From: Mytilus californianus
Taxonomy: Eukaryota
Assembly: GCF_021869535.1 (NCBI RefSeq)
Contig: NW_026262581.1
Location: 86,800,001 to 86,864,000, forward strand
Reading direction: 5' to 3'
DNA: 64,000 nucleotides
The notes beneath the pieces were generated by a model. That model was not told the origin of the DNA. It saw nothing but the letters and a program-made list of their open reading frames with translations, and searched no databases. Below, piece by piece: positions 26,001 through 48,911 of this stretch; the stretch's first letter is position 1; every line of letters starts with the position of its first letter. Made by a program: the position numbers and the translations under genes.

Positions 26001-29000
26001 CCAATGACAATGATCTGTTATTTATTACAATAAACCAATGACAATGATCTGTTATTTATAAAAATAAACCATTGATAATTATCTGTTATTTATAACAATA
26101 AACCAATGACAATGATCTGTTATTTATTACAATAAACCAGTGACAACGATCTTATTTATAACAATAAACCATTGATAACGATCTGTTATTTATTACAATA
26201 AACCAAATTGAATGATAATGATGTGTTATTTATAACAATTAACCAATGATAATGATGTGTTATTTATTACAATAAACCATTGATAATAATCTGTTATTTA
26301 TTACAATAAACCAATGATAATGATCTGTTATTTATTACAATAATCCAATGATACTGATCTGTTATTTATTACTATAAACCATTGATAATGATCTGTTATT
26401 TATAACAATAAACCAATGACAATGATGTGTTATTTATAACAATAAACCAACGACAGTGATCTGTTTTTTATTTCAATAAACCAATGATAATGATGTTATT
26501 TTTAACAATAAACCAATGATAATGATATGTTATTTATTACAGATAGTTCTAGATTATACTTACATTGATGAAACCAAACTTGTAGATGAACTATTTCCAC
26601 AAGACACTTGTAAAGAAAGAATACACACAATATTTGGTAATAAGATTTCTTTTAAGGTGCCATTCTTTTATTAGTATACTAGACTTTTTTAGTTAGCAAA
26701 ATGTTAAGCCGTATGTTTTTTTAAACATTTATACTTGTTTATTATGAAGGAAATAAAATGTTTCCCCAGAATAAGTTTGTGTTTACATGGCCATTTAGAT
26801 TTTAGCAAATTGAACTAGCTCATAGAATAATTACAATAGCTATTGTTTTCTGTCAAGTTCATTCAATTGAAACTTTATATTTCTATCTGAAAAACCAATC
26901 ATTTATTGATTAATTTAGCTGTACAAAAATTTAAAAAAGATTAATGATATTCAGCAATCCCAGTACATACCTTTGGGAATTAAAAAAAAATCTAACAGAA
27001 AAAAGAATTTCTTTCAAGACTTAGGCGTATTGTTTCCGTTGTCAATGGCATTGTCACCAATGTTTTAGTTTGTGGTTAGGTCAGTTTAAGGGAAACCACT
27101 AGTGGTAGGTCAATGATATTTGGTATGCAGTTGTATTAGCATTAGCACATCTCAATTCTATCTAATAAATGATGTATGATGCCCTCCTTTGAATAGGATG
27201 TGGTGATTCTTGATTAACATTAGTGCTTTATATATATAAAATTATCCAATGTAGGTTACATAGTATTGACTAGTTCAGGTCGGAATTTCTATATTCTAAA
27301 TAATCTAATATAATTGGTTTTTTTTGGGTTATTTTTTAGTTTGGATAGATACAATAGAAGAACTTGTAAAGAAATGTCTTCCAGAAACATCAGTAAGTGT
27401 TAAAAAACAGATAAGATTTGTAGTTATATTATTACACTTTGCAATTGCAAGCATGCCTGTACCAAGTCAGGAATATGACAGTTGTTTTCCATTCGTTTGA
27501 TGTGTTTGAGCTTTTGATTTTGCCATTTGATAAGGGACTTTCCATTTTGAATTTTCCTTGGACATGTTGGAGTTCAGTATTTTTGTTATTTGACTTTTTA
27601 TTCATAATAAATTAAAATTTGCAACTGTTTTTACCCAAAAGAGACTACCTTATTGATTTTTTATTTGGGTTTAATCCTATTCTCTAAACACTCACACCCT
27701 TCCATTGTGGTCAATTTGTATATAGTGGAGTAAACCAAAGTCAGTAGTAATTAATTACAGACTTTCCATTAACAAAAGACAAATTTCAGCACAAATCTAT
27801 AGGTGAATATAAAAATAAGAAGACATGGTATGATTGCCAATGAGACAACTCTCCACCAGAGACCAAATGACTTATAAGTAACCAACTATAGGCCTTCAAT
27901 AATGAGCAAAACCCATATCGCACAGCAAGCTATAAAAGGCCCCAAAATGACAAATGTAAAACAATTCAAGCGAGAAAACTAACAGCCTGGTGTAAAAGCA
28001 TTGACAGAAGCACATTTTATATAGAGTACAAGAGCGCTTTATACTTAAAATGTTCACAGGATCAACGCTTTCACCCCAATAAAATTATAAAAAGAAGCAT
28101 TCAATTCTTACAATTAAATTATATACTACTATTATGAAATTTATAGTTATATCAAGCCTTCGTTTGTTTTCCTATGCATTGTTGTGACATTGTCATGAAT
28201 GTTGCATTGTTTTTAGCCAATCAAAAGTACTGATTTTTTTTTAAAATGTAATGTATTTATAATGAAGTTAGAGTTTATCTCTTAATTATTGTTTAAGCAT
28301 GATAACTAGTTGTATATATAAAACCCTGAAATTATTTTATTTAGTTTGAAACTTTCTATATATAGATGGTAGACTGTTTAGGACATGAATTAGTGGAATG
28401 TATTAATTGGAGGAAGGGTGCTTTGTTATATATGTTATGCAGTACAATTAAAGGAGATAGTAACAGAGAAGACCAAATAAATTATGAATTTTATATGGTA
28501 AAAATCTATTGTGATGGTATTATTTTTGGAAAATCCAACAGGATAAGTGTTGCATTAATTTAATTTTTTTTTAAAAAACCAATTGTATTACAAGTATGCA
28601 GTTTGTCTTCAAATGGCATTATTAATCTTGCATTTCTGATAAATGCACACAATTATTTTCATCATCAGAATGAATTATATTACTTTCAAATCAATTGTTG
28701 AATAATCGAATATCCTATTATAGATTATTAGAGAAACAAGGAAAACTATTAATCATTTTTGGAAAATTGAGTTTGTTCATTGAAACCACATAAAATTTAT
28801 GAAACTATAGTAGATATTACATTTTTTTTTGCATTTTGACCAATATATGGTCTATATTTTAAAAGTTATTTTTCATAATTGAATACCTTCATATTAAAGT
28901 CATATGAAACGAGTTTCTTGTAATTATAATGTTATCAAAATTATTGAACCAATGCAAGCGTATACTAAACCAGTCAGGATTCTACTTCATCAAAATTATC

Positions 29001-32000: not shown

Positions 32001-35000
32001 TCTAATGTTCTTTCACTTAACAATAGTTCTTAGTTTAAATCTTTTCATTTGAAAACCCTGTATTTTAATTACCACCTATAAATAGTATGCTTCATTTTGA
32101 CTGATATCCACTATCAGTTTGTTTACATTTTCAACCAACCACCAGAACAAGCTACCACAGAATCATGAGAACATGCAAAGTCCATTTTTAATGTTACCAG
32201 ATATCAGTATAAGTCATTGTCTATTTAAAACCCTGACACCTATTACAAATTGGATACACATTTTTGACCATATTAAGTTTCTGTCCTCAAGCAAACAAAA
32301 ATAATCAAATAATAATAATTAAAGTTAATGAGTAATTCATTATGAAGTCCAAATTATAAAAGCTTAACAAATAGCAAGAATACATTTGACTTTATATGTT
32401 CATTTAAATAAAATGATAATCAACAGCTGTTTCTTTATGGTCACACCTGCAAAAATCAGGTCAGTTAACAGATATGTGCTTATTGAAGCAGATGGCCCGA
32501 CTCTAAAATTTGTCGTAAAAAATTACCTGGTGATAAACTAATTAATTTGCAGGTCAAATAGATACAGTATTTTGTAACAGAAATGGCCAAAATCACAGGG
32601 AATTTAAATCATGTAAAGATGGAAATGGGTCATTTAACTTTAGCCACCCTTACATAAACTGCTGTACTGAGTTATAAAGAGAAACAAGGTATCAGTAATG
32701 CATCATTATTTACAATTTTTTCTATCTTTACAGGTATATACAGTGACACACTAAGTACGATGTATGTTGGTGAAATGTGCTATTGGTTATGTAACAAACC
32801 TTTCTATCTTTACAGGTATATACAGTGACACATACTAAGTATTATGTATGCTGGTGAAATATGCTATTGGTTATGTAACAAACCTTTCTATCTTTACAGG
32901 TATATACTGTGACACACACTAAGAACGATGTATGTTGGTGAAATGTGCTATTGTTTTGTAACAAACCTTTCTATCTTTACAGGTATATACAGTGACACAC
33001 ACTAAGTACGATGTATGCTGGTGAAATGTGCTATTGGTTATGTAACAAACCTTTCTATCTTTACAGGTATATACAGTGACACACACTTACTAAGTATGAT
33101 GTATGCTGGTGAAATGTGTTATTGGTTATGTAACAAACCTTTCTATCTTTACAGGTATATACAGTGACACACACTTACTAAGTATTATGTATGCTGGTGA
33201 AATGTGCTATTGGTTATGTAACAAACCTTTCTATCTTTACAGGTATATACAGTGACACACACTTACTAAGTATGATGTATGCTGGTGAAATGTGCTATTG
33301 GTTATGTAACAAACCTTTCTATCTTTACAGGTATATACAGTGACACACACTTACTAAATATGATGTATGCTGGTGAAATGTGCTATTGGTTATGTAACAA
33401 ACCTTTCTATCTTTACAGGTATATACAGTGACACACACTTACTAAGTATGATGTATGCTGGTGAAATATGCTATTGGTTATGTAACAAACCTTTCTATCT
33501 TTACAGGTATATACAGTGACACACTAAGTACGATGTATGTTGGTGAAATGTGCTATTGGTTATGTAACAAACCTTTTTATCTTTACAGGTATATACAGTG
33601 ACACATACTAAGTATTATGTATGCTGGTGAAATATGCTATTGGTTATGTAACAAACCTTTCTATCTTTACAGGTATATACTGTGACACACACTAAGAACG
33701 ATGTATGTTGGTGAAATGTGCTATTGTTTTGTAACAAACCTTTCTATCTTTACAGGTATATACAGTGACACACACTAAGTACGATGTATGCTGGTGAAAT
33801 GTGCTATTGGTTATGTAACAAACCTTTCTATCTTTACAGGTATATACAGTGACACACACTTACTAAGTATGATGTATGCTGGTGAAATGTGTTATTGGTT
33901 ATGTAACAAACCTTTCTATCTTTACAGGTATATACAGTGACACACACTTACTAAGTATTATGTATGCTGGTGAAATGTGCTATTGGTTATGTAACAAACC
34001 TTTCTATCTTTACAGGTATATACAGTGACACACACTTACTAAGTATGATGTATGCTGGTGAAATGTGCTATTGGTTATGTAACAAACCTTTCTATCTTTA
34101 CAGGTATATACAGTGACACACACTTACTAAATATGATGTATGCTGGTGAAATGTGCTATTGGTTATGTAACAAACCTTTCTATCTTTACAGGTATATACA
34201 GTGACACACACTTACTAAGTATGATGTATGCTGGTGAAATATGCTATTGGTTATGTAACAAACCTTTCTATCTTTACAGGTATATACTGTGACACACACT
34301 AAGTATTATGTATGCTGGTGAAATGTGCTATTGATTTTGTAACAAACCTTTCTATCTTTACAGGTATATACAGTGACACACACTAAGTACGATGTATGTT
34401 GGTGAAATATGCTATTGGTTATGTAACAAACCTTTCTATCTTTACAGGTATATACAGTGACACATACTAAGTACTGTGTATGTTGGTGAAATTGGCTATT
34501 GGGTATGTAACAAACCTTTCTATCTTTACAGGTATATACAGTGACACACACTAAGTATTATGTATGCTGGTGAAATGTGCTATTGGTTATGTAACAAACC
34601 TTTCTATCTTTACAGGTATATACAGTGACACACACTTACTAAGTATGATGTATGCTGGTGAAATGTGCTATTGGTTATGTAACAAACCTTTCTATCTTTA
34701 CAGGTATATACAGTGACACACACTTACTAAGTATGATGTATGCTGGTGAAATGTGTTATTGGTTATGTAACAAACCTTTCTATCTTTACAGGTATATACA
34801 GTGACACACACTTACTAAATATGATGTATGCTGGTGAAATGTGCTATTGGTTATGTAACAAACCTTTCTATCTTTACAGGTATATACAGTGACACACACT
34901 TACTAAGTATGATGTATGCTGGTGAAATATGCTATTGGTTATGTAACAAACCTATCTATCTTTACAGGTATATACAGTGACACACACTTATTAAGTACGA

Positions 35001-37157
35001 TGTATGCTGGTGAAATATGCTATTGGTTATGTAACAAACCTTTCTATCTTTACAGGTATATACAGTGACACACACTAAGTATTATGTATGCTGGTGAAAT
35101 GTGCTATTGGTTATGTAACAAACCTTTCTATCTTTACAGGTATATACAGTGACACACACTTACTAAGTATGATGTATGCTGGTGAAATGTGTTATTGGTT
35201 ATGTAACAAACCTTTCTATCTTTACAGGTATATACAGTGACACACACTTACTAAATATGATGTATGCTGGTGAAATGTGCTATTGGTTATGTAACAAACC
35301 TTTCTATCTTTACAGGTATATACAGTGACACACACTTATTAAGTATGATGTATGCTGGTGAAATATGCTATTGGTTATGTAACAAACCTATCTATCTTTA
35401 CAGGTATATACAGTGACACACACTTATTAAGTACGATGTATGCTGGTGAAATATGCTATTGGTTATGTAACAAACCTTTCTATCTTTACAGGTATATACA
35501 GTGACACACACTAAGTATTATGTATGCTGGTGAAATGTGCTATTGGTTATGTAACAAACCTTTCTATCTTTACAGGTATATACTGTGACACACACTAAGT
35601 ATGATGTATGTTGGTGAAATGTGCCATTAGTTTTGTAACAAACCTTTCTATCTTTACAGGTATATACAGTGACACACACTTACTAAGTATGATGTATGCT
35701 GGTGAAATATGCTATTGGTTATGTAACAAACCTATCTATCTTTACAGGTATATACAGTGACACACACTTATTAAGTACGATGTATGCTGGTGAAATATGC
35801 TATTGGTTATGTAACAAACCTTTCTATCTTTACAGGTATATACAGTGACACACACTAAGTATTATGTATGCTGGTGAAATGTGCTATTGGTTATGTAACA
35901 AACCTTTCTATCTTTACAGGTATATACAGTGACACACACTTACTGAGTATAATGTATGTTGGTGAAATGTGCTTTTGGTTTTGTAACAAACCTTCCTATC
36001 TTTACAGGTATATACTGTGACACACACTAAGTATGTTGTATGCTGGTGAAATGTGCTATTGATTTTGTAACAAACCTTTCTATCTTTACAGGTATATACA
36101 GTGACACACACTAAGAATGATGTATGTTGGTGAAATGTGCTATTAGTTTTGTAACAAACCTCTCTATCTTTACAGGTATATACAGTGACACACACTTACT
36201 AAGTATGATGTATGTTGGTGAAATGTGCTATTAGTTTTGTAACAAACCTTTCTATCTTTACAGGTATATACAGTGACACACACTTACTAAGTATGATGTA
36301 TGTTGGTGAAATGTGCTATTGTTTTGTAACAAACCTTTCTATCTTTACAGGTATATACAGTGACACACTAAGTACTATGTATGTTGGTGAAATGTGCTAT
36401 TGATTTTGTAACAAACCTTCCTATCTTTACAGGTATATACAGTGACACACACTAAGTATTATGTATGCTGGTGAAATGTGCTATTGATTTTGTAACAAAC
36501 CTTCCTATCTTTACAGGTATATACAGTGACACACACTAAGTATGATGTATGTTGGTGAAATGTGCTATTGATTTTGTAACAAACCTTTCTATCTTTACAG
36601 GTATATACAGTGACACACTAAGTACTATGTATGTTGGTGAAATATGCTATTGGTTATGTAACAAACCTTTCTATCTTTACAGGTATATACAGTGACACAC
36701 ACTAAGTATTATGTATGCTGGTGAAATGTGCTATTGGTTATGTAACAAACCTTTCTATCTTTACAGGTATATACAGTGACACACACTTACTAAGTATGAT
36801 GTATGCTAGTGAAATTGGCTATTGGTTATGTAACAAACCTTTCTATCTTTACAGGTATATACAGTGACACACACTTACTAAGTATGATGTATGCTGGTGA
36901 AATGGGCTATTGGTTTTGTAACAAACCTTTCTATCTTTACAGGTATATACAGTGACACACACTTACTAAGTATGATGTATGCTGGTGAAATGTGTTATTG
37001 GTTTTGTAACAAACCAGAACAAAGTACTTCTGACTTTAATCCAAAGGTTATAGGACAAGACCTACTATCAAAATATATTGCATGTGCAAAGTCACCAGTT
37101 ATGTATGGATGGTCAACAGACAAAGCTGAAGAATTTCTTAAAGTTATGTCAACATGA
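23008..37157 (+). CDS. RIMOC1: RAB7A-interacting MON1-CCZ1 complex subunit 1 (C5orf51/UPF0600 orthologue); 7 exons, about 258 aa
   Basis: Exons 23008-23077, 24406-24515, 26543-26636, 27340-27392, 28366-28497, 31731-31833 and 36943-37157 join in frame (777 nt) with GT-AG borders. Peptides YAQIVLDYTYIDETKLVDELFP, LGHELVECINWRKGALLYM and GIYSDTHLLSMMYAGEMCYW match recalled C5orf51 motifs (ILDMTYFEENKLVDEDFP, LGDELLECLSWRRGALLYM, GIFSDIHLLAMMYSGEMCYW). Confidence 0.9.
24406..24515 (+). CDS. RIMOC1: RIMOC1 exon 2
   Basis: ttttgcag acceptor, CAG|gtaaaa donor; SLVELLKQYAQ. Confidence 0.87.
25484..26542. repeat. 34-bp minisatellite (about 31 copies) ending in the RIMOC1 exon 3 acceptor
   Basis: Unit aataaaccaatgataatgat(a/c)tgttatttattac; the last unit ends ttattacAG. 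Confidence 0.93.
26543..26636 (+). CDS. RIMOC1: RIMOC1 exon 3
   Basis: ttattacag acceptor (last unit of a 34-bp array), G|gtaata donor; IVLDYTYIDETKLVDELFP. Confidence 0.9.
27340..27392 (+). CDS. RIMOC1: RIMOC1 exon 4
   Basis: ttttttag acceptor (in-frame alternative AG 9 nt downstream), TCA|gtaagt donor. Confidence 0.8.
28366..28497 (+). CDS. RIMOC1: RIMOC1 exon 5
   Basis: tatatag acceptor, ATG|gtaaaa donor; LGHELVECINWRKGALLYMLC. Confidence 0.9.
30092..30585. mobile_element. Internally deleted HINE-like element
   Basis: tttttatacgaccgc...gtcgtata start and gtcgtatccagctg...gaagcagtttatt end, shared with 39322-42218. Confidence 0.7.
31217..31600. mobile_element. Hairpin-ended non-autonomous element (copy of 735-2312)
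   Basis: Long imperfect inverted arms at about 31442-31497 and 31533-31596. Confidence 0.65.
31731..31833 (+). CDS. RIMOC1: RIMOC1 exon 6
   Basis: gtttcag acceptor, G|gtaagt donor; GIEYLQQML. Confidence 0.9.
32719..37015 (+). repeat. 82-88-bp satellite (about 50 copies) built from the RIMOC1 last-exon acceptor plus the first 73 coding nt
   Basis: Unit tttctatctttacag|gtatatacagtgacacacacttactaagtatgatgtatgctggtgaaatgtgctattggttatgtaacaaacc; the final unit runs into unique coding sequence. Confidence 0.95.
36943..37157 (+). CDS. RIMOC1: RIMOC1 terminal coding exon (intact copy at the end of the satellite)
   Basis: ctttacag acceptor; GIYSDTHLLSMMYAGEMCYWFCNKPEQ...GQDLLSKYIACAKSP...GWSTDKAEEFLKVMST*; AATAAA near 37373 and 37383. 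Confidence 0.85.
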
Positions 37158-42559: not shown

Positions 42560-43780
42560 AGTGATCAGGGAAGGTTTTCAGGATAAGATTTCCTTCTAAG
42601 TAACAATGCATGATGACTCAACCATATTTCGTATGCGGATTGGTTGCAAGGAGTATATTTCTGTCATATATAACTCGTATGTCCTTGACCTCAATTTGAA
42701 ATCCATTGGTCAGGTTAATTTTTCAAATACATGTATGTCAACAATATTTGATTAATGGATCGATTGCAAGACATATGTGTTCATCTGACATGTTTCAAAT
42801 GGCCTTGACCTCAAGTTCACACTTCAGTGGTCAGTTTAAAGTTTACATGATCAGGTATGTTCTTCAGTAATGAACATGAAAGGTCAACAAGACTTGGACT
42901 GTACTTTGGATTCAAAAAGTATATTCTGTCTACCATATGTAGTATGCCTTGACCTGAATTTCATCCCCCTATACAGTGTATTTAGGTGTTTTTTTAGATT
43001 AAAGTATGGTTCTCAATAACTGTATACAATAGATGAACAATATATGATATGTGGACCGGTTGCTAGTAGTGTGTGTCTATTCTTTACAATTTGGCCTTCA
43101 TCTCAATTTCATGCTCCAATGATCAGGATAATTATTAGAATGAGGTTTGTTCTCTCTGATAAACAAAATAAGTTGATTTACTGTCTGGTCTTGAAATTTT
43201 GACTTGATCTATATAAGGCTGAAGTGATCAGCCGGAGTTTTCAGGCTGGGGTCTTTGTCCTAGTACCTATGCATGACATGTCAACAATATTTGCTATGTG
43301 AATTGGTTGCAAGGAGTGTAGGGAATATTTCATATGTCCTTGGCCTCAAATTTCATGCAACAGTGAAAAGTTTTCAGAATGAAGCCTGTTTCTCGGTACT
43401 TTTACATGATGTGTAAATATTATTATGTCTGTCTGACATATGTCATGACCTTGACCTAAATTTCAGGGTGAGGTCTCTTCCTCAGTAACTTGACAATGTA
43501 TACAATAGGTCAACAATATGTTGTGTGTAAATTGATTGTAAGATGAATATGTACATGTATTGTTGTCTCTTTGACACAATCCCCATTTCCATTCTCAATT
43601 TTATGTGATCATAATGATATTTGGTTTTTTCTTATGATTAGGTCTGTTTCTCAGTAACAATGCATGATTCTTCAATCATATTTGATAAGTGGATTGGATT
43701 GGAGGAGCGTATGTCAGTCTGATATATTTCATATGACCTTGACATCAATTTCACGCTCAAATGGTCATGTTAAGTGTTCG
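42560..43780. mobile_element. Old degenerate HINE-like element (reverse orientation of the 8818 family)
   Basis: Recurring tgaccttgacct(c/g) and ttcatg...agtggtcag units. Confidence 0.45.
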
Positions 43781-44021
43781 TTATTTATTCCTCCTCAGTT
43801 TCTATACATTAAAGGTCTCAGTATAGGCTGCGTAAGTTAACGCAAGGGTCTATATTATTAAAATATAATTAATTGGTTAATAGTTTAGCAGGAACTATTT
43901 GAATAAACGTATTCAATTTTGTCTCTCTTATTTAATACAGTTAAATTGAACAAACACCCATTTATTCTTATTACCCAATATGAGCATATATATATATTAC
44001 ATTTCCTTAAGTATTAGTATT

Positions 44022-45788
44022 TTATATTTGTTTTTCAGGAAATGCCTTTTCAATTTTAAGATGATCGTTATATATTTTTTCCAAAAACTCAGTTGTTGAC
44101 ATGTCACTTCCTTTGGATGGTAACTGTTTATCTTTAAGAACACACTTTGAGTATATGTCTACTATAGCTTTTGCAAACTTTGAAGTTAATTCTTCATCCT
44201 CAACCATATGAGCTCTCACGGTTCTGGGTATTTCTAATTGAAATGAAGGAATACCCAGACACACAGATTGAGTTGTCATGGTATATAAATCTCCTCCCCA
44301 GTCTCCACATAACAGGGGGTCCACATTTATTGCATATTTCATACCTCTTTTCTCGTATGCAGGGTCCTGGAACACTTGTGTAAAAGCAGAATGCGTTTCC
44401 TCTTTGAACATATCCACAAACTTTGTGCTATGCCAACGAGTTTCCATTGCACGAAACCCAGCGTCTACATCCATATTACTTTTCCTATCTTTTTTCCCGT
44501 GAATATCAATATGAAATATTGGCATATTGTTTTCTTTGCCGTAAATTTTGAATTGTTCCAATGCTTCATGCCAAGGAGACTGGATAAACTGTTTTTCGGT
44601 CAAATAATTCGGATCTAAATTCCTAAAATCTGCCGGCATTCCTACTTTCCTATCCCATATAATAAAACTTGCAGGATAGCCTGTATATTTGCTGATATGA
44701 ATTGCTAATTTTAGAACAATTTCAGTAACATAGATTTCTCTATAATGTATACGGCGCCTTCGACCGTCCGTTCCACCTCTCCAGATTTTCAAACCATGAG
44801 GTGCACTAAGTAAAATTGGACCATTAAGTCTGAACATGCAAGAATTATTCCCTGTTATTAGTTTTGGCAGTGTAGGCTGGACAAATGTTCGTTCAGTGCA
44901 ACGACTGCTTGCCGATTTCTGTTTACAAGCTTGACGAGATGTGCTATTTGCTGAATCTGGATTTCCGTTTATTTCGATATTTTTCAATTTTTTTGTGCTA
45001 TTGTGGTGTTTGTGAAGTATATTTCTAGAATCGATATTTTGTAAATTGATGTTTGAAGTTAAGTTTTCTCTTCTATCGTACTTTGCAGAATAGCGATCTG
45101 ATGAGCTTCCGGTGTACCGAGAAGAACACGTTGCTCTGGAAAGGGCAGAAGTTTGTCTGAGTATATTTTCAGATAAATGTGGAGATGTTGGCAGAAGAGT
45201 TTTCTTTTTGCTGCTTAAAATTATCCTATTAAGAGCTTGCCGCATTTCTTTCTGTATCTTTGATTTGGTGAACGACTTGATAACAATATAATCAAAACAA
45301 TTTTCGTCTGTTAATCCTGTTTTAGGAGAACCTTTTCCTATCGTATCTCTTGACCGACATCTTTCCGCATGAGTTAAAATTTTGTTGATGATACTTTCTG
45401 AAGTATTTTGTCTGTTTTCGATTCTTAATTTTTCTAGTGGTGTAGTCACTGAATTTTTATCTTTTGATGTTGTTTTAATGTCAGTTTTACCGACATAAGA
45501 TGTTAAATTTCCTTGAAGTTTTGGAAATGTTACTCCCGGATAACTTGAAACCCTTGCGACATGCGGACTTTCAAAAAGAATAGGACCCTTTGTTTGATAT
45601 GAAGTAGAATGGCCGAAGGTATATTCCGTGACTTTAGTTCCAGGTACGGTATTCGGTAGATGAAACTGCTTTCGTTTACACGAGAGAGGCCTTCCAGAAT
45701 GATAATCTGTTCGGATCTGCGATAGACTTCGGGGGCCTAACCAGGTGTTGGCGTTACTGATGGATGGCCTCTCCCCCATTGTCGTCAT
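44022..45788 (-). CDS. Uncharacterised 588-aa protein: basic Ser/Thr/Arg/Lys-rich N-terminal half plus a C-terminal N-formylglutamate amidohydrolase-like (Zn-dependent exopeptidase fold) domain; single coding exon
   Basis: 1767-nt uninterrupted ORF in AT-rich DNA. An in-frame stop lies upstream of the ATG, a ttttttcag acceptor at 45836, and AATAAA at 43961-43966 about 55 nt past the stop. Motifs occur in FGase order: ILLSAPHG, LDPNY, SPWHEAL, HIDIHG, DVDAG, WGGDLYT, FQLEIPR. Confidence 0.8.
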   Translation of the reverse strand: MTTMGERPSISNANTWLGPRSLSQIRTDYHSGRPLSCKRKQFHLPNTVPGTKVTEYTFGHSTSYQTKGPILFESPHVARVSSYPGVTFPKLQGNLTSYVGKTDIKTTSKDKNSVTTPLEKLRIENRQNTSESIINKILTHAERCRSRDTIGKGSPKTGLTDENCFDYIVIKSFTKSKIQKEMRQALNRIILSSKKKTLLPTSPHLSENILRQTSALSRATCSSRYTGSSSDRYSAKYDRRENLTSNINLQNIDSRNILHKHHNSTKKLKNIEINGNPDSANSTSRQACKQKSASSRCTERTFVQPTLPKLITGNNSCMFRLNGPILLSAPHGLKIWRGGTDGRRRRIHYREIYVTEIVLKLAIHISKYTGYPASFIIWDRKVGMPADFRNLDPNYLTEKQFIQSPWHEALEQFKIYGKENNMPIFHIDIHGKKDRKSNMDVDAGFRAMETRWHSTKFVDMFKEETHSAFTQVFQDPAYEKRGMKYAINVDPLLCGDWGGDLYTMTTQSVCLGIPSFQLEIPRTVRAHMVEDEELTSKFAKAIVDIYSKCVLKDKQLPSKGSDMSTTEFLEKIYNDHLKIEKAFPEKQI

Positions 45789-46826
45789 ACAACATTGAAT
45801 CTAGTTGTTGCAGTCACCATTTGTTATGGTTTGAACTGAAAAAAAATATTTAAAATTATTCAAGTTGATTGAAACTATTAGTGTTGCTATTAATGAGCAA
45901 ATATCATATTTTACAATATGGGAATAGCTGTCTGCTATAACTTTATTATTCCCAGATTGTTATACAGAGTTCAAACAAATATATAGAAGCAATCAATTGT
46001 AAAATGGCTTCTTGTTACCTGAAAATCAAACGTGTATAAATTTCTCAAAATATTTTAAAACAAAAACAAAAAACAGTAGTTCTCGAAGCCAGGCTTAATT
46101 GAAACCTAGTGATTATTTGTCAATTTGCTATGATGCAGTTCTTGTAGGATAAATTCCGATAATTTCGAATTCTTACAGGGAAAAACTGCTAACATTAACT
46201 AAACGTGTTAAACAAGTTGCTTTATTTATTTTGCAGAAACTGTAGTAGTATCAATTGTATGCAAAAATGTCAGGTAAACAATAAGGCTAACCTGGGCCTC
46301 TAAGGACCTATAATTTGAATTAACCATAACTTGATAATTAAATCTATAGTATATGTTAGATTTCGTCTCTAATTTGTTGTCGTTTTCCTGCATATGTGTG
46401 ATTGCATGCATATAGATGAAGTAGCACAACCAACATCTGAAAACGAAGTCATCTCAAACTGGTACTATTGGTCGTCATGACATTGCAGAAAGGTGTGAGC
46501 TATTGCTCCATGTCAATCTAATTAAAATATATATCTCTGATTTCGTTATGCTCATATGACGCAAGTTACGATAGATCTATATTTTGATTAGATTGGCTCC
46601 GTGTTGAAGGCTCAGCTTATTTTGAGATGAAGAACAGTAATAAAAGTGTTGTTCCTTTGCTTTTGTCTAGGACAAATATATATGTATTACTGTAATAGTT
46701 CTAGCTTTTGACAAGTGCGTTTAGGAATATTGAGTCGTGAATAAATACACCACATTCCTTCTTTTCTACAATTAAGTTTCAAAACATGCAGTGAATTCAT
46801 TCAAGAATTAGATATTGAAAGGTTAC

Positions 46827-48029
46827 ACACGGCTGTCATTCGGTATATCGAGAAAAATTATCGTGAAAGAATAAGTAACGGTGGTAAAGTATTGCAACTG
46901 GACCGTGAAAGGTCTGGTATAGGATCGTGAAGGGAATCTTATCGAGAAGTCACATGCAATGTCAGCAAATAATCTAATTTAATCAATTATGCCAAAATGC
47001 CATACAGACATAATTGGTTAACGTGGCCATATCTGGGATCAAGCAGCCAAAACTGTGAAAACATACATCACAACTTAATTTAACGTTCAAGCGCACTCAC
47101 AATTATATCAAACAAACCACCAGAAAAGTTTTTGTAGTTGATATAATACAGTCAGTGTAGTAAAGCATAATTACAGAGCTCCTTAAGTGTTATGTAAATA
47201 TAAATATTTTCGTCTGCCGGAGATTTAATCTGGTGAGCACCAGTTTGAAAAATCGTGCACACGACTTTGAAACTCGTTCGCACGACTTTCAAACTAGTGC
47301 GCACGACTTTCAAATTTGAAATCATCTCGCTTGTCATACACTCTGGTATTGAGATGACCGCTGTAGTTAAATTCGGGGTATATGTCTAAAAATGAGGCAG
47401 AGGAAGCTGTATATGTGGTGCCTGTGTAAGACATAATAGTGTCCTGTGAAAAAGTGTCCACCTGGACAGTTTTTCATAGAATTTTGGTATTTAATAATGT
47501 CCATTGCCATGAAATATTGTCCCTCAAGTGGACAGATTTTTACTGCAAAAGTTATGAAATAGTGTCCACCCACAGGACAAGTTTTCATAGTAGTTGCTAT
47601 TAAATTGTGTCCCCAAGGGAAGTAATACAAAGGTCATTAAAAAGTTTTATTATACTTGAAATTTTAATAAAATCAGAACGATTGAGTAGAAATTGATTTA
47701 TATAAACAAACAAATAATGGTTGGATGTGAATATAGAGATATTTAAGTTCTAAGAAATACCCAGCTAATGCTAATGACAATGAAAGAAGAACAATAAGAA
47801 GGAAGTGTATAAAGTATAAAATCAAATGCGAAGAACTTTACTATATTTATTATGAGAACAAGTGGACAGAATTTTACAGCAAAAGTTATGAAATATAGTC
47901 CACCTACAGGACTAGTTTTCGTAGTAATTGTTATCAAATTGTGTCCTCCAAGGAAAATAATATTGAACAGCATCTGTTACTTGTTTGAATTTAAATCATT
48001 ATACATGTATATATATATATATATACATG

Positions 48030-48061
<32 letters not shown>

Positions 48062-48911
48062 TTAAAAAATAAGAAGATAAGGATGGTATGAGTGCCAATG
48101 AGACAACTCTCTGTCAAAGTAACAATGTATTAAAAGTTAGCAATTATAGGTTAAAATACGTCCAGTAATAACAGGGAAATGGATATCATTTAATACTTTA
48201 ATCCTAATAAAAAAATGTCCTGGCGGACATAATGTCCTGTGAAACTTGAAAGGTCCACCTGGATAGAATTATAGTATTAAATATTGTCCATGTTCATGGA
48301 CACTTTTTCATACCTGAGGACATATTTGCATAGGAAATTGTGTCTGGGACACATTTAAATAAGTAAATATTGTCCATGGACAGTATTTACTATGAACCGG
48401 TGGACATTATTTCATTGGGGACATTATTGAATCCTACACCTGTAGTCACTAATTCATGACAATTAATGGGACCCAATCAGAAAAGTTTGTATTGTTAATG
48501 GAAAGAACATCTTTAATACACATGTATGTAAAATTAAATGATATAGCTTCTTTGATCTAACCCTTACGAAAAAGAAAACGTACACATTAAGATATTTTCA
48601 GGTGAAGACCACCAGACCCCTTTGTGGATGCATTACGCATTTTATATACAAAGATATTTACTTTTCGACAATTTACGCTACTGGGGGTATTATTATCTTG
48701 AATGCCTAGTTACATGTATCATTGCCTCTTAATGAAAACAGGTCTAAATATGGGTATCTATATATATTTCACCAAAAAAAATAAAGTAGAATTACACTTA
48801 ATTGCATTCACGATCCGATACCAGATCTTTCACGATCCGATCGCAATGCTTGACCACCGTTAAGTATTCTTTCACGATCAGTTTTCTCGATATACTGAAT
48901 GACACCCGTGT
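46827..48911. mobile_element. Composite non-autonomous DNA transposon with about 110-bp TIRs and 3-bp TSD (tac), containing nested repeats
   Basis: acacggctgtcattcggtatatcgagaaaa...atcgtgaa (46827-46932) versus the reverse complement at about 48808-48911; tac on both flanks; nested TIR element at about 47418-48443. Confidence 0.7.

What the first reader, a model, noticed from the sequence alone, without database searches (positions are those of the whole stretch)
44022..45788. Intronless FGase-fold zinc hydrolase fused to a long basic low-complexity N-terminus
Seen: residues from about 320 onward have SAPHG...REIYVTE...LDPNY...PWHEAL...HIDIHG...DVDAG...GGDLYT...QLEIPR, after about 320 aa of S/T/R/K-rich sequence. 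The CDS has no introns, while its neighbours have many short exons. Established: this motif order typifies N-formylglutamate amidohydrolase (HutG) and phage poly-gamma-glutamate hydrolases of the Zn-carboxypeptidase-like fold, and animals normally catabolise histidine through FTCD instead. Inference: an uncharacterised animal glutamyl-amide hydrolase, possibly horizontally acquired or retroposed. The basic tail could target polyanions such as polyglutamylated tubulin or bacterial poly-gamma-glutamate.
Basis: partly seen in the sequence, partly recalled or inferred. Interest (0 to 1): 0.7.

Follow-up and report, generated by a model that had tools for sequence, protein, structure and literature searches.

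The report
Mussel PghP/FGase-like zinc hydrolase gene
This is a real, transcribed mussel gene for a zinc amide-hydrolase built like bacterial and phage enzymes that cut gamma-glutamyl bonds; it belongs to an unnamed family otherwise found in marine protists and, among named animal sequences, only in molluscs, and its substrate is unknown.

Summary
A 588-codon ORF (44022-45788, minus strand) encodes a basic, Ser/Thr-rich N-terminal half (pI 10.1) and a 240-residue C-terminal domain carrying every quoted motif.

The gene is single-copy and transcribed. It lies beside RIMOC1 in both mussel and oyster, and abalone also has it. Bivalves and abalone form one clade inside a family of at least 458 representatives, mostly marine protists.

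Three things point to gamma-glutamyl amide substrates:
- Protist members are often fused to GGACT and glutamine-amidotransferase-like domains.
- The nearest prokaryotic relatives sit directly upstream of pgsC, and in the one long contig pgsB, in 3 of 3 contigs.
- The mussel genome has FTCD but no match to HutF, PgsB or PgsC.

A conserved C-terminus, [ED][KR][QM]I, is predicted to dock at the metal site.

Retroposition is not supported. Ancient transfer from a protist versus loss in other animals remains open. The scan had not noted this family before.

The parts
44022..45788 (-). Complete coding sequence, 588 codons plus TAA, in a single exon
   Evidence: ORF listing. In-frame TAG upstream of the ATG. 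A co-linear 1913-nt transcript contig covers it. Single copy in the genome.
44856..45788 (-). N-terminal region, residues 1-311: basic (pI 10.1), Ser/Thr-rich, probably disordered, bivalve-specific. It holds short conserved motifs such as RVSSYP (residues 79-84, 45537-45554).
   Evidence: Composition and pI. pN/pS 0.28-0.35 among mytilids, so it is constrained but more loosely than the domain. Motif islands are conserved among mussel, oyster and pearl oyster. The abalone homologue has only about 55 residues here. The Atlas whole-protein model has mean pLDDT 0.56.
44133..44855 (-). Catalytic domain, residues 312-552, with the FGase/PghP-like zinc-hydrolase fold
44796..44798 (-). His331 in SAPHG: proposed first zinc ligand, equivalent to PghP His40
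   Evidence: Present in at least 90% of 110 family members and invariant in A1-A3. Aligned to PghP His40 in the global profile alignment. Lies in the predicted contact patch of the C-terminal tail.
44736..44738 (-). Glu351 in HYRE: proposed second zinc ligand, equivalent to PghP Glu45
   Evidence: Near-invariant. The spacing E351-x4-E356 mirrors PghP E45-x4-E50, both conserved. This assignment is my own inference: the forced alignment itself puts Glu45 on the non-conserved Asp341.
44568..44570 (-). His407 in SPWH: equivalent to PghP His78, which binds substrate/phosphate
   Evidence: Present in at least 90% of the A1-A3 alignments. Aligned to His78. The role of His78 is taken from PMC6506827.
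44499..44501 (-). His430 in HIDIHGK: proposed third zinc ligand, equivalent to PghP His103
   Evidence: Near-invariant. Aligned to the SxHG motif of PghP. Neighbouring residues 431-433 lie in the tail contact patch.
44214..44234 (-). Glu519 to Arg525 in QLEIPRTVR: proposed catalytic base and carboxylate-anchoring arginine, equivalent to PghP/PghL Glu165 and Arg171
   Evidence: Arg525 is invariant in all 110 members and Glu519 is near-invariant. This is the only segment aligned by local hhalign against the PghP family (E 0.0015, probability 17%). Roles are taken from PMC6506827.
44025..44132 (-). C-terminal tail, residues 553-588: a helix plus the terminal EKQI (44025-44036), predicted to fold back onto the catalytic domain with its end at the metal site
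   Evidence: 65 of 109 non-redundant family members end in I or V, and 43 end in [KR][QMSTE][IV]. Tail pLDDT is 85-94 in the AlphaFold model of residues 312-588. The complex test passed.
45789..45848 (-). 5' leader (45789-45835) holding an 11-codon upstream ORF (ATG at 45818-45820, TGA at 45785-45787, overlapping the main ATG as ATGA), preceded by a T-rich tract plus CAG (45836-45848) that looks like a splice acceptor
   Evidence: Sequence. The X1 contig starts exactly at 45835. Oyster and abalone have similar pyrimidine-CAG sites 50-60 nt upstream of their ATG. The intron itself was not seen.
43923..44021 (-). 3' UTR, with AATAAA (43961-43966) and ATTAAA (43931-43936) shortly before the transcript contig's end at 43923
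   Evidence: Sequence. End of the X1 contig.

Best explanation
The locus is a functional, single-copy mollusc gene, probably for a cytosolic enzyme (no evident signal peptide). The enzyme is a zinc-dependent amidohydrolase of the FGase / PghP branch of the carboxypeptidase-like fold.

Proposed mechanism (inferred):
- His331, Glu351 and His430 hold the zinc.
- Glu519 activates the water or the attack.
- Arg525 and His407 hold a substrate carboxylate.
- The bond cut is most likely a gamma-glutamyl amide: a gamma-linked oligo- or polyglutamate, or a gamma-glutamyl-amine or peptide. It is not N-formylglutamate from histidine breakdown.

The protein belongs to an unnamed family spread through marine protists. 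Members there often carry a GGACT domain and a glutamine-amidotransferase-like domain.

A conserved C-terminal helix ending in [ED][KR][QM]I folds back so that the free C-terminus sits at the metal site. It could act as a lid or pseudo-substrate, or as part of the pocket.

Bivalves added a 230-310-residue basic, disordered N-terminus with short conserved motifs, likely for regulation or targeting.

Shown here: the gene, its transcription, the fold, residue conservation, the taxonomic spread, the fusions and the operon context. Inferred: metal binding, the substrate class, and the roles of the tail and the N-terminus.
For: Gene and expression:
- ORF; single copy.
- X1 gives a 1913-nt co-linear contig at depth 28 with no flank coverage. 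X1 holds only 65 million letters, too few for genomic DNA of a 1.65-Gb genome to reach that depth, so it is RNA. X5 agrees.
- Purifying selection: pN/pS 0.11-0.13 in the domain and 0.28-0.35 in the N-terminus.
- Synteny with RIMOC1 in both mussel and oyster.

Fold:
- AlphaFold pLDDT 93.8.

Catalytic residues:
- Conserved across 110 members.
- Mapped to PghP H40, E45, H78, H103, E165 and R171. Their roles come from PMC6506827.

Substrate class:
- 11 of 110 members carry GGACT, 8 carry BPL_N and 7 carry DJ-1/PfpI.
- Prokaryotic homologue P0104 matches the family profile (hhalign probability 98%, E 1.3e-13).
- P0103, P0104 and P0105 each sit directly upstream of a pgsC-like gene (94-96 bits; cut-off 96.45). 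On the one contig that is long enough, pgsB follows at 372 bits.
- The mussel genome has FTCD but no HutF match.

C-terminal tail:
- Conserved terminus; tail pLDDT 85-94.
- Complex test score 0.81 against a best control of 0.03. That mark was reached by 51 of 78 solved complexes and 2 of 108 mismatched pairs. The runs agree in at least 78% of contacts and the partner pLDDT is at least 69.
- Contact residues include 331, 349-353, 431-433 and 522.
Against: - No sequence model of a characterised family reaches significance. The local profile alignment to PghP covers only the QLE..R motif, at 17% probability.
- The full residue mapping rests on a forced global alignment plus my own reading of it. 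That alignment puts PghP Glu45 on the non-conserved Asp341.
- I could not inspect model coordinates, so zinc-site geometry is unverified.
- The His-to-Glu spacing is 19 residues, against 4 in PghP.
- PghP's substrate-binding Thr80 and Ser81 are not conserved, so specificity may differ.
- The mussel genome has no PgsB/PgsC match, and the protein has no evident signal peptide. Bacterial-type poly-gamma-glutamate is therefore neither made by the host nor obviously reachable.
- The pgsC-like neighbours score just under the curated cut-off.
- The fusions and operon context come from distant relatives, not from the mollusc proteins.
- Abalone homologues lack the terminal Ile.
- The one confirmed RNA-seq run (X21, 6% sampled) has no reads on the gene.
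- The complex test is not calibrated for peptides or for parts of one chain.
Confidence: 0.6

Rival explanations
1. It is a classical N-formylglutamate amidohydrolase (HutG) completing a bacterial-type histidine degradation pathway in molluscs.
Against: PF05013 does not hit the mussel protein or anything else in its genome. No HutF, the enzyme that makes N-formylglutamate, was found, while FTCD exons are present. The fusions to GGACT and amidotransferase-like domains and the pgsC/pgsB operon context point to gamma-glutamyl chemistry. The 310-residue basic extension and the docking tail are not features of HutG.
Confidence: 0.05
2. It is a protein deglutamylase. The basic N-terminus binds acidic tubulin tails (or other polyglutamylated proteins) and the domain removes gamma-linked branch-point glutamates, as CCP5 does.
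Against: The CCP5 match is no better than matches to other M14 enzymes and is weaker than those to FGase and PghP. The basic N-terminus is bivalve-specific, being absent from abalone and protist members, so it cannot define the family's substrate. Most ciliated organisms, including other named animals, lack the family. No direct test was possible.
Confidence: 0.12
3. It is a zinc amidase with a different substrate (for example an N-acyl amino acid, a peptidoglycan-derived peptide or another small amide), or a catalytically regulated binding protein. On this view the gamma-glutamyl clues from distant relatives do not carry over to the mollusc protein.
For: PghP's substrate-specific residues Thr80 and Ser81 are not conserved, and a 15-residue hairpin is inserted beside the metal site. 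The fold also houses Amidase_3, MpaA, DapE-like and M14 enzymes. The mollusc proteins themselves carry no GGACT or amidotransferase domain.
Against: The catalytic set, including the carboxylate-anchoring Arg, is conserved and under strong purifying selection. Two independent kinds of context, eukaryotic fusions and a prokaryotic operon, both point to gamma-glutamyl compounds.
Confidence: 0.2
4. It is not a resident animal gene: either contamination, a recent horizontal insertion from a bacterium or phage, or a recent retrocopy.
For: The coding sequence is uninterrupted in an intron-rich genome. The fold is best known from bacteria and phages.
Against: The gene lies on a chromosome-scale contig between animal genes. 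It is convergent with RIMOC1 in both mussel and oyster. Orthologues occur in Mytilus galloprovincialis, oysters, a pearl oyster and three abalone species, and they form one clade (SH-aLRT 99). Its composition is host-like (GC 37%, GC3 29%, window 32%). There is no second copy that could be a parent. A pattern scan of 185,579 prokaryotic species genomes found no close relative.
Confidence: 0.03

Closest known systems
Phage and Bacillus poly-gamma-glutamate hydrolases PghP / PghL (YndL); Pfam PF05908 Gamma_PGA_hydro; MEROPS M86 (PDB 3a9l, 5onj, 21dc)
   Different: PF05908 does not reach significance. There are 19 rather than 4 residues between the first His and the Glu, because of an inserted hairpin. 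PghP's Thr80 and Ser81 are not conserved. PghP has no docking C-terminal tail and no long basic N-terminus. This protein is eukaryotic with no evident signal peptide, whereas PghP comes from phages that attack encapsulated bacteria.
N-formylglutamate amidohydrolase family (HutG; Pfam PF05013 FGase; PDB 2odf, 2q7s)
   Different: No PF05013 hit above threshold for the mussel protein or any of 110 relatives. No HutF match, so the histidine pathway context is absent. Sequence identity to the solved structures is only 9-16%.
Unnamed prokaryotic proteins of about 229 aa encoded directly upstream of pgsC and pgsB (P0103, P0104, P0105; metagenomic)
   Same: True homologues by profile comparison (probability 98%, E 1.3e-13, 30% identity over 176 columns). 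They share PILLSAPH, RExY, LDPN.Y, IDIHG, D.D.G and PALQLEI...R.
   Different: They are stand-alone domains without the N-terminal extension and without the helix-plus-[KR]Q-I tail. They are prokaryotic and operonic with a poly-gamma-glutamate synthase. The mussel genome has no such synthase match.
M14 metallocarboxypeptidases, including the tubulin deglutamylase CCP5 (PDB 8v3p)
   Different: Weaker structural match than to FGase or PghP, and no sequence similarity. The H348-x-x-E351 motif resembles the M14 HxxE, but His331 rather than His348 aligns with the first ligand of PghP.

Membership tests
Pfam PF05013 FGase (HutG) | Match to the family HMM above the gathering score (28.9 bits) | tested here: not met
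   No hit for the whole protein or the isolated domain at E up to 10. No PF05013 match anywhere in the genome. Among 110 relatives there are only 10 sub-threshold hits, the best at E 9.5e-5.
Pfam PF05013 FGase (HutG) | FGase three-dimensional fold | tested here: met
Pfam PF05013 FGase (HutG) | Pathway context: a formiminoglutamate deiminase (HutF) to supply N-formylglutamate | tested here: not met
   No TIGR02022 match in the mussel genome, while FTCD_N exons are present. A six-frame search of an intron-rich genome can miss a gene.
Pfam PF05908 Gamma_PGA_hydro / MEROPS M86 (PghP) | Match to the family HMM above the gathering score (22 bits) | tested here: not met
   No hit for the mussel protein. 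10 of 110 relatives give sub-threshold hits, the best at E 0.0012. Local hhalign against a PghP alignment gives probability 17%, E 0.0015, over 33 columns only.
Pfam PF05908 Gamma_PGA_hydro / MEROPS M86 (PghP) | Zinc ligands His40, Glu45 and His103 | tested here: inconclusive
   Conserved His331, Glu351 and His430 take these positions, going by a forced global profile alignment plus my motif reasoning. These residues also cluster in the predicted tail contact patch. The His-Glu spacing differs (19 against 4), and coordinates could not be inspected.
Pfam PF05908 Gamma_PGA_hydro / MEROPS M86 (PghP) | Catalytic Glu165 with Arg171 six residues later (Q-L-E-x5-R) | tested here: met
   Q517-L518-E519-x5-R525 aligns to Q163-L164-E165-x5-R171 in both local and global hhalign. 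Arg525 is invariant and Glu519 near-invariant in 110 members.
Pfam PF05908 Gamma_PGA_hydro / MEROPS M86 (PghP) | Substrate-contact residues His78, Thr80 and Ser81 | tested here: not met
   His407 aligns with His78, but the following residues are E-A-L rather than x-T-S.
Pfam PF05908 Gamma_PGA_hydro / MEROPS M86 (PghP) | Hydrolysis of poly-gamma-glutamate | not testable with these tools
   Needs an enzyme assay. The only evidence here is indirect context.
Unnamed eukaryotic FGase/PghP-like family (defined here by alignment A2) | Conserved blocks PILL(S/T)APHG, HxRE...TE, SFxxW, NLDPNYL, SPWH, HIDxHGKxDR, DxDxG, QLEIPxxxR | tested here: met
   All are present in the mussel protein. The profile finds 742 representatives at E up to 1e-3 and 458 at up to 1e-10 among 1.84 billion.
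Unnamed eukaryotic FGase/PghP-like family (defined here by alignment A2) | C-terminal helix plus a free terminus [ED][KR][QM][IV] | tested here: met
   The mussel protein ends in EKQI. 65 of 109 non-redundant members end in I or V, against a 10% background. This holds even in members where a GGACT domain lies between the catalytic domain and the terminus.

The most novel reading that the evidence does not exclude
Molluscs, alone among animals, keep (or took from a marine protist more than 500 million years ago) a cytosolic gamma-glutamyl-polymer hydrolase of a eukaryotic family that has never been described. Its own free C-terminus plugs the zinc site as a built-in pseudo-substrate gate. In bivalves a basic, phosphorylatable N-terminal region (for example the 14-3-3-like RVSSYP motif) controls where and when the gate opens. 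If so, there would be an unrecognised route for turning over gamma-linked glutamate chains (folate tails, protein polyglutamylation branch points or ingested bacterial capsule) in animals and protists.
Probability: 0.25. Interest if true: 0.75.

Novelty: new variant of a known kind. Interest (0 to 1): 0.55.

Why it matters
The fold and chemistry are known from bacteria and phages. This branch, though, is a large unannotated family: at least 458 representatives at 50% identity, no Pfam model and no paper found. It is spread across several eukaryotic supergroups and, among named animal sequences, is seen only in molluscs.

It gives three testable ideas:
- A second, zinc-based way for eukaryotes to cut gamma-glutamyl chains, besides the cysteine enzyme GGH and the CCP deglutamylases.
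- A conserved C-terminal tail that may gate a carboxypeptidase-like pocket.
- A clean case for asking whether an old animal gene with an uninterrupted coding sequence came from a protist or survived only in one phylum.

The prokaryotic relatives next to pgsC and pgsB also look like an unrecognised component of poly-gamma-glutamate operons.

Tried and rejected
Searches that found nothing:
- Pfam, NCBIfam and PHROGs scans of the whole protein and of each half gave nothing meaningful. The weak HAUS6_N and DUF3734 hits are far below their cut-offs and I treat them as noise.
- PDB sequence searches with the protein, with the family profile and with the bridging protein P0105 gave only chance hits.
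- A pattern scan of GTDB species genomes with the family profile found no relative. The scan used a single peptide pattern, so it shows only that close relatives are absent.
- No PF05013, HutF, PgsB or PgsC match in the mussel genome.
- Literature searches for the family, for the LOC identifiers, and for formylglutamate together with molluscs found nothing relevant.

Leads checked and dropped:
- Partial hits at 51-53% identity (P0066, P0068, P0080, P0099) might have been intron-split animal genes. They are protist-like fragments, some with GGACT.
- A search with the abalone protein for further animal homologues found only abalone and bivalves.
- dS among the available mytilids is saturated, so only pN/pS is given.
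- The confirmed RNA-seq run X21 shows no reads on the gene, so it gave no strand, start or splice information.
- The tree leaves the sister group of the mollusc clade unresolved, so no donor can be named.
- Rfam found nothing relevant in 43000-48500, only a sub-threshold mir-297 match.
Full report
OBSERVATION

The window holds one long ORF at 44022-45788 on the minus strand: 588 codons, ATG start, TAA stop.

Residues 1-311 are 24% Ser+Thr and 16% Lys+Arg, with pI 10.1. The domain has pI 8.8. An in-frame TAG at 45801-45803 lies upstream of the ATG, so the coding sequence sits entirely in one exon. The N-terminus has no hydrophobic stretch that would suggest a signal peptide (sequence). GC content is host-like: CDS 37%, third positions 29%, window 32%.

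IS IT A REAL, EXPRESSED ANIMAL GENE?

- It is single-copy in the 1.65-Gb assembly.
- Run X1 holds one 1913-nt contig covering 43923-45835 with no mismatch, at depth 28, and nothing on the flanks apart from a short repeat. Run X5 gives 43986-45442.
- X1 totals only 65 million letters. That is about 0.04-fold of this genome, so the depth can only come from RNA.
- The contig ends 8 nt after ATTAAA and 38 nt after AATAAA.
- The contig starts exactly after a T-rich tract plus CAG. The gene therefore probably has a 5'UTR intron, although the coding part is uninterrupted. Oyster and abalone have similar sites 50-60 nt before their ATG. This is suggestive only.
- The one run on record as RNA (X21, about 6% sampled) has no reads on the gene, so expression is not universal.
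- Among three mytilid sequences, synonymous sites are near saturation (pS 0.63-0.83). pN/pS is 0.11-0.13 in the domain, 0.12-0.21 in the tail and 0.28-0.35 in the N-terminal half. The whole ORF is therefore under purifying selection.

NEIGHBOURS AND ORTHOLOGUES

RIMOC1 (PF17716) matches exon by exon at 28363-28524 and 36933-37145 on the plus strand. It is convergent with this gene. The earlier scan note s1-274868 gave this lead.

In Crassostrea virginica the orthologue (545 aa, one 1638-bp ORF) is also convergent with a RIMC1 gene. The abalone homologue is a single 990-bp ORF beside TMEM214.

Named animal holders are Mytilus galloprovincialis, Crassostrea, Saccostrea, Pinctada and three Haliotis species. 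No other animal appeared in three word-index searches covering lengths of 132-1029 aa.

In a quick maximum-likelihood tree of 110 non-redundant domains, the 9 bivalve rows and 2 abalone rows form one clade (SH-aLRT 99). Six of the nine bivalve rows are unnamed contigs that I labelled bivalve by similarity. The clade's sister group is unresolved.

WHAT THE DOMAIN IS

No Pfam, NCBIfam, PHROGs or PDB sequence search reaches the protein. The suggested HMM test with PF05013 and PF05908 therefore fails as a membership test.

Structure comparison gives a clear answer:
- An AlphaFold model of residues 312-551, built on a 17-sequence alignment, has pLDDT 93.8.
- Foldseek puts the poly-gamma-glutamate hydrolases YndL/PghL, PM1 and PghP first (E 1e-6 to 4e-6). 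M14-like carboxypeptidases and FGase follow.
- The ESM Atlas searches agree.

Catalytic residues. Across 110 family members, W378, D392, D428, G431, G444 and R525 are invariant. A329, P330, H331, H348, E351, H426, H430, Q517 and E519 are present in at least 90%.

I built a PghP-family alignment from eight phage genes:
- Local hhalign aligns only Q-L-E519-x5-R525 with Q-L-E165-x5-R171 (E 0.0015, probability 17%).
- Forced global alignment adds H331 to H40, H407 to H78 and H430 to H103. It also aligns T355-E356 with T49-E50.
- From that last pairing I infer that E351 corresponds to E45, since each lies five residues before the second conserved Glu. The forced alignment itself places E45 on the non-conserved D341. 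An inserted hairpin of about 15 residues separates H331 from E351.
- In PghP/PghL these are the zinc ligands (H, E, H), a substrate-binding His, the catalytic Glu and a carboxylate-anchoring Arg. Mutation of His40, Glu45, His78, His103 or Glu165 in PghP impairs activity (PMC6506827).
- PghP's Thr80 and Ser81 are not conserved here.
- I could not inspect coordinates, so the zinc geometry remains inferred.

THE FAMILY

A profile search of 1.84 billion representatives finds 742 at E up to 1e-3 and 458 at up to 1e-10. Named holders:
- Heterolobosea: Naegleria and Willaertia.
- Diplonemids and a prokinetoplastid.
- A rhizarian (Lapot).
- A ciliate (Stylonychia).
- Picozoa, Triparma and Guillardia.

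The Atlas also lists a mostly chlorophyte cluster.

Of 110 members, 11 carry GGACT (PF06094), 8 carry BPL_N and 7 carry DJ-1/PfpI, the last two being the glutamine-amidotransferase-like fold. Several long proteins have all three parts.

The nearest prokaryotic relatives are proteins of about 229 aa. P0104 matches the family profile with hhalign probability 98% and E 1.3e-13. P0105 also gives a sub-threshold PF05013 hit.

In all three contigs examined, which come from three different sources, the gene is followed at once by a pgsC-like gene (TIGR04011, 94-96 bits against a cut-off of 96.45). In the one contig that is long enough, pgsB follows (TIGR04012, 372 bits against 222.7).

Fusions in eukaryotes and operons in prokaryotes thus point independently to gamma-glutamyl compounds. 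The mussel genome has FTCD exons but no match to HutF, PgsB or PgsC. This argues against a HutG role and against host-made bacterial-type polyglutamate.

THE C-TERMINAL TAIL

- 65 of 109 non-redundant members end in Ile or Val, against a 10% background. 43 end in [KR][QMSTE][IV]. The commonest ending is EKQI, as in the mussel.
- The ending is preceded by a conserved helix. It persists even where a GGACT domain lies between the catalytic domain and the terminus.
- An AlphaFold model of residues 312-588 places the tail with pLDDT 85-94.
- In the complex test (domain against residues 553-588) the score was 0.81 and the best of three controls 0.03. That mark was reached by 51 of 78 solved complexes and 2 of 108 mismatched pairs. 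The runs agree in at least 78% of contacts, and the partner's pLDDT is at least 69.
- The tool notes that peptides and predicted chains are untested, and a pass supports binding but does not show it.
- The tail helix packs on helix 352-366. The listed contacts of the last residues include 331, 334, 349-351, 381-383, 431-433 and 522, which is the proposed metal site.
- I read this as a lid or pseudo-substrate, or as part of the pocket. That is an inference. Abalone homologues lack the final Ile.

THE N-TERMINAL HALF

It is basic in all bivalve orthologues (pI 9.8-10.4) and almost absent in abalone and protists. Short islands are conserved from mussel to oyster. One is R-V-S-S-Y-P (79-84), which fits the R-x-x-S-x-P form of a 14-3-3 or basophilic-kinase site; that form is from my own knowledge and was not tested. 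Because the extension is bivalve-specific, it cannot explain the family's substrate.

ORIGIN

Retroposition is not supported:
- There is no parent copy.
- The gene predates the bivalve-gastropod split.
- It is syntenic between mussel and oyster.

Contamination or a recent bacterial insertion is excluded by the same facts and by the host-like composition.

Two readings remain: an ancient transfer from a protist into a mollusc ancestor, or vertical descent with loss in other animals. The uninterrupted coding sequence in all three lineages and the absence from other named opisthokonts lean towards transfer. The tree does not resolve a donor.

VERDICT

The fold and glutamyl-amide reading is supported and sharpened, and the HutG and retrogene readings are unlikely. 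The protein is a new variant of a known kind of enzyme and belongs to an unannotated family.

Noticed in passing
window 43560-43604, with related joints near 46513 and 48086: A 45-nt sequence about 320 nt downstream of the gene's transcript end has enormous depth in every run laid. In X21, all 1418 reads laid were only partly on the stretch, and many different flanks were seen. It looks like the core of a very abundant, transcribed interspersed repeat in this mussel.
   Followed up: partly
window 45785-45820 (minus strand): An 11-codon upstream ORF in the 5' leader ends in a TGA that overlaps the main start codon (ATGA). This arrangement is typical of termination-reinitiation control. I did not check whether it is conserved in other species.
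   Followed up: no
L014:2959-5444, L016:835-2024, L017:164-1385 (metagenomic contigs): A prokaryotic homologue of about 229 aa of this family is encoded immediately upstream of pgsC, overlapping it in L014 and L017, and then pgsB. It looks like an unannotated component, probably a hydrolase, of poly-gamma-glutamate synthesis operons.
   Followed up: partly
P0048, P0051, P0046 (Haliotis rufescens, H. rubra, H. asinina): The abalone homologues are only 73-75% identical to one another within one genus, and they lack the family's terminal Ile. This suggests faster or relaxed evolution of the gene in abalone.
   Followed up: no
window 32719-37157: The PF17716 search hit the same 24-residue piece of RIMOC1 about 25 times in tandem, at spacings that are multiples of 88 bp. 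This matches the splice-acceptor minisatellite already noted by the scan.
   Followed up: partly
window 48001-48065 (plus strand): A sub-threshold Rfam match to the mir-297 precursor (32.5 bits against a gathering score of 90) lies in a repeat-rich stretch that also has very high read depth. It is most likely a simple-repeat hairpin rather than a microRNA.
   Followed up: no
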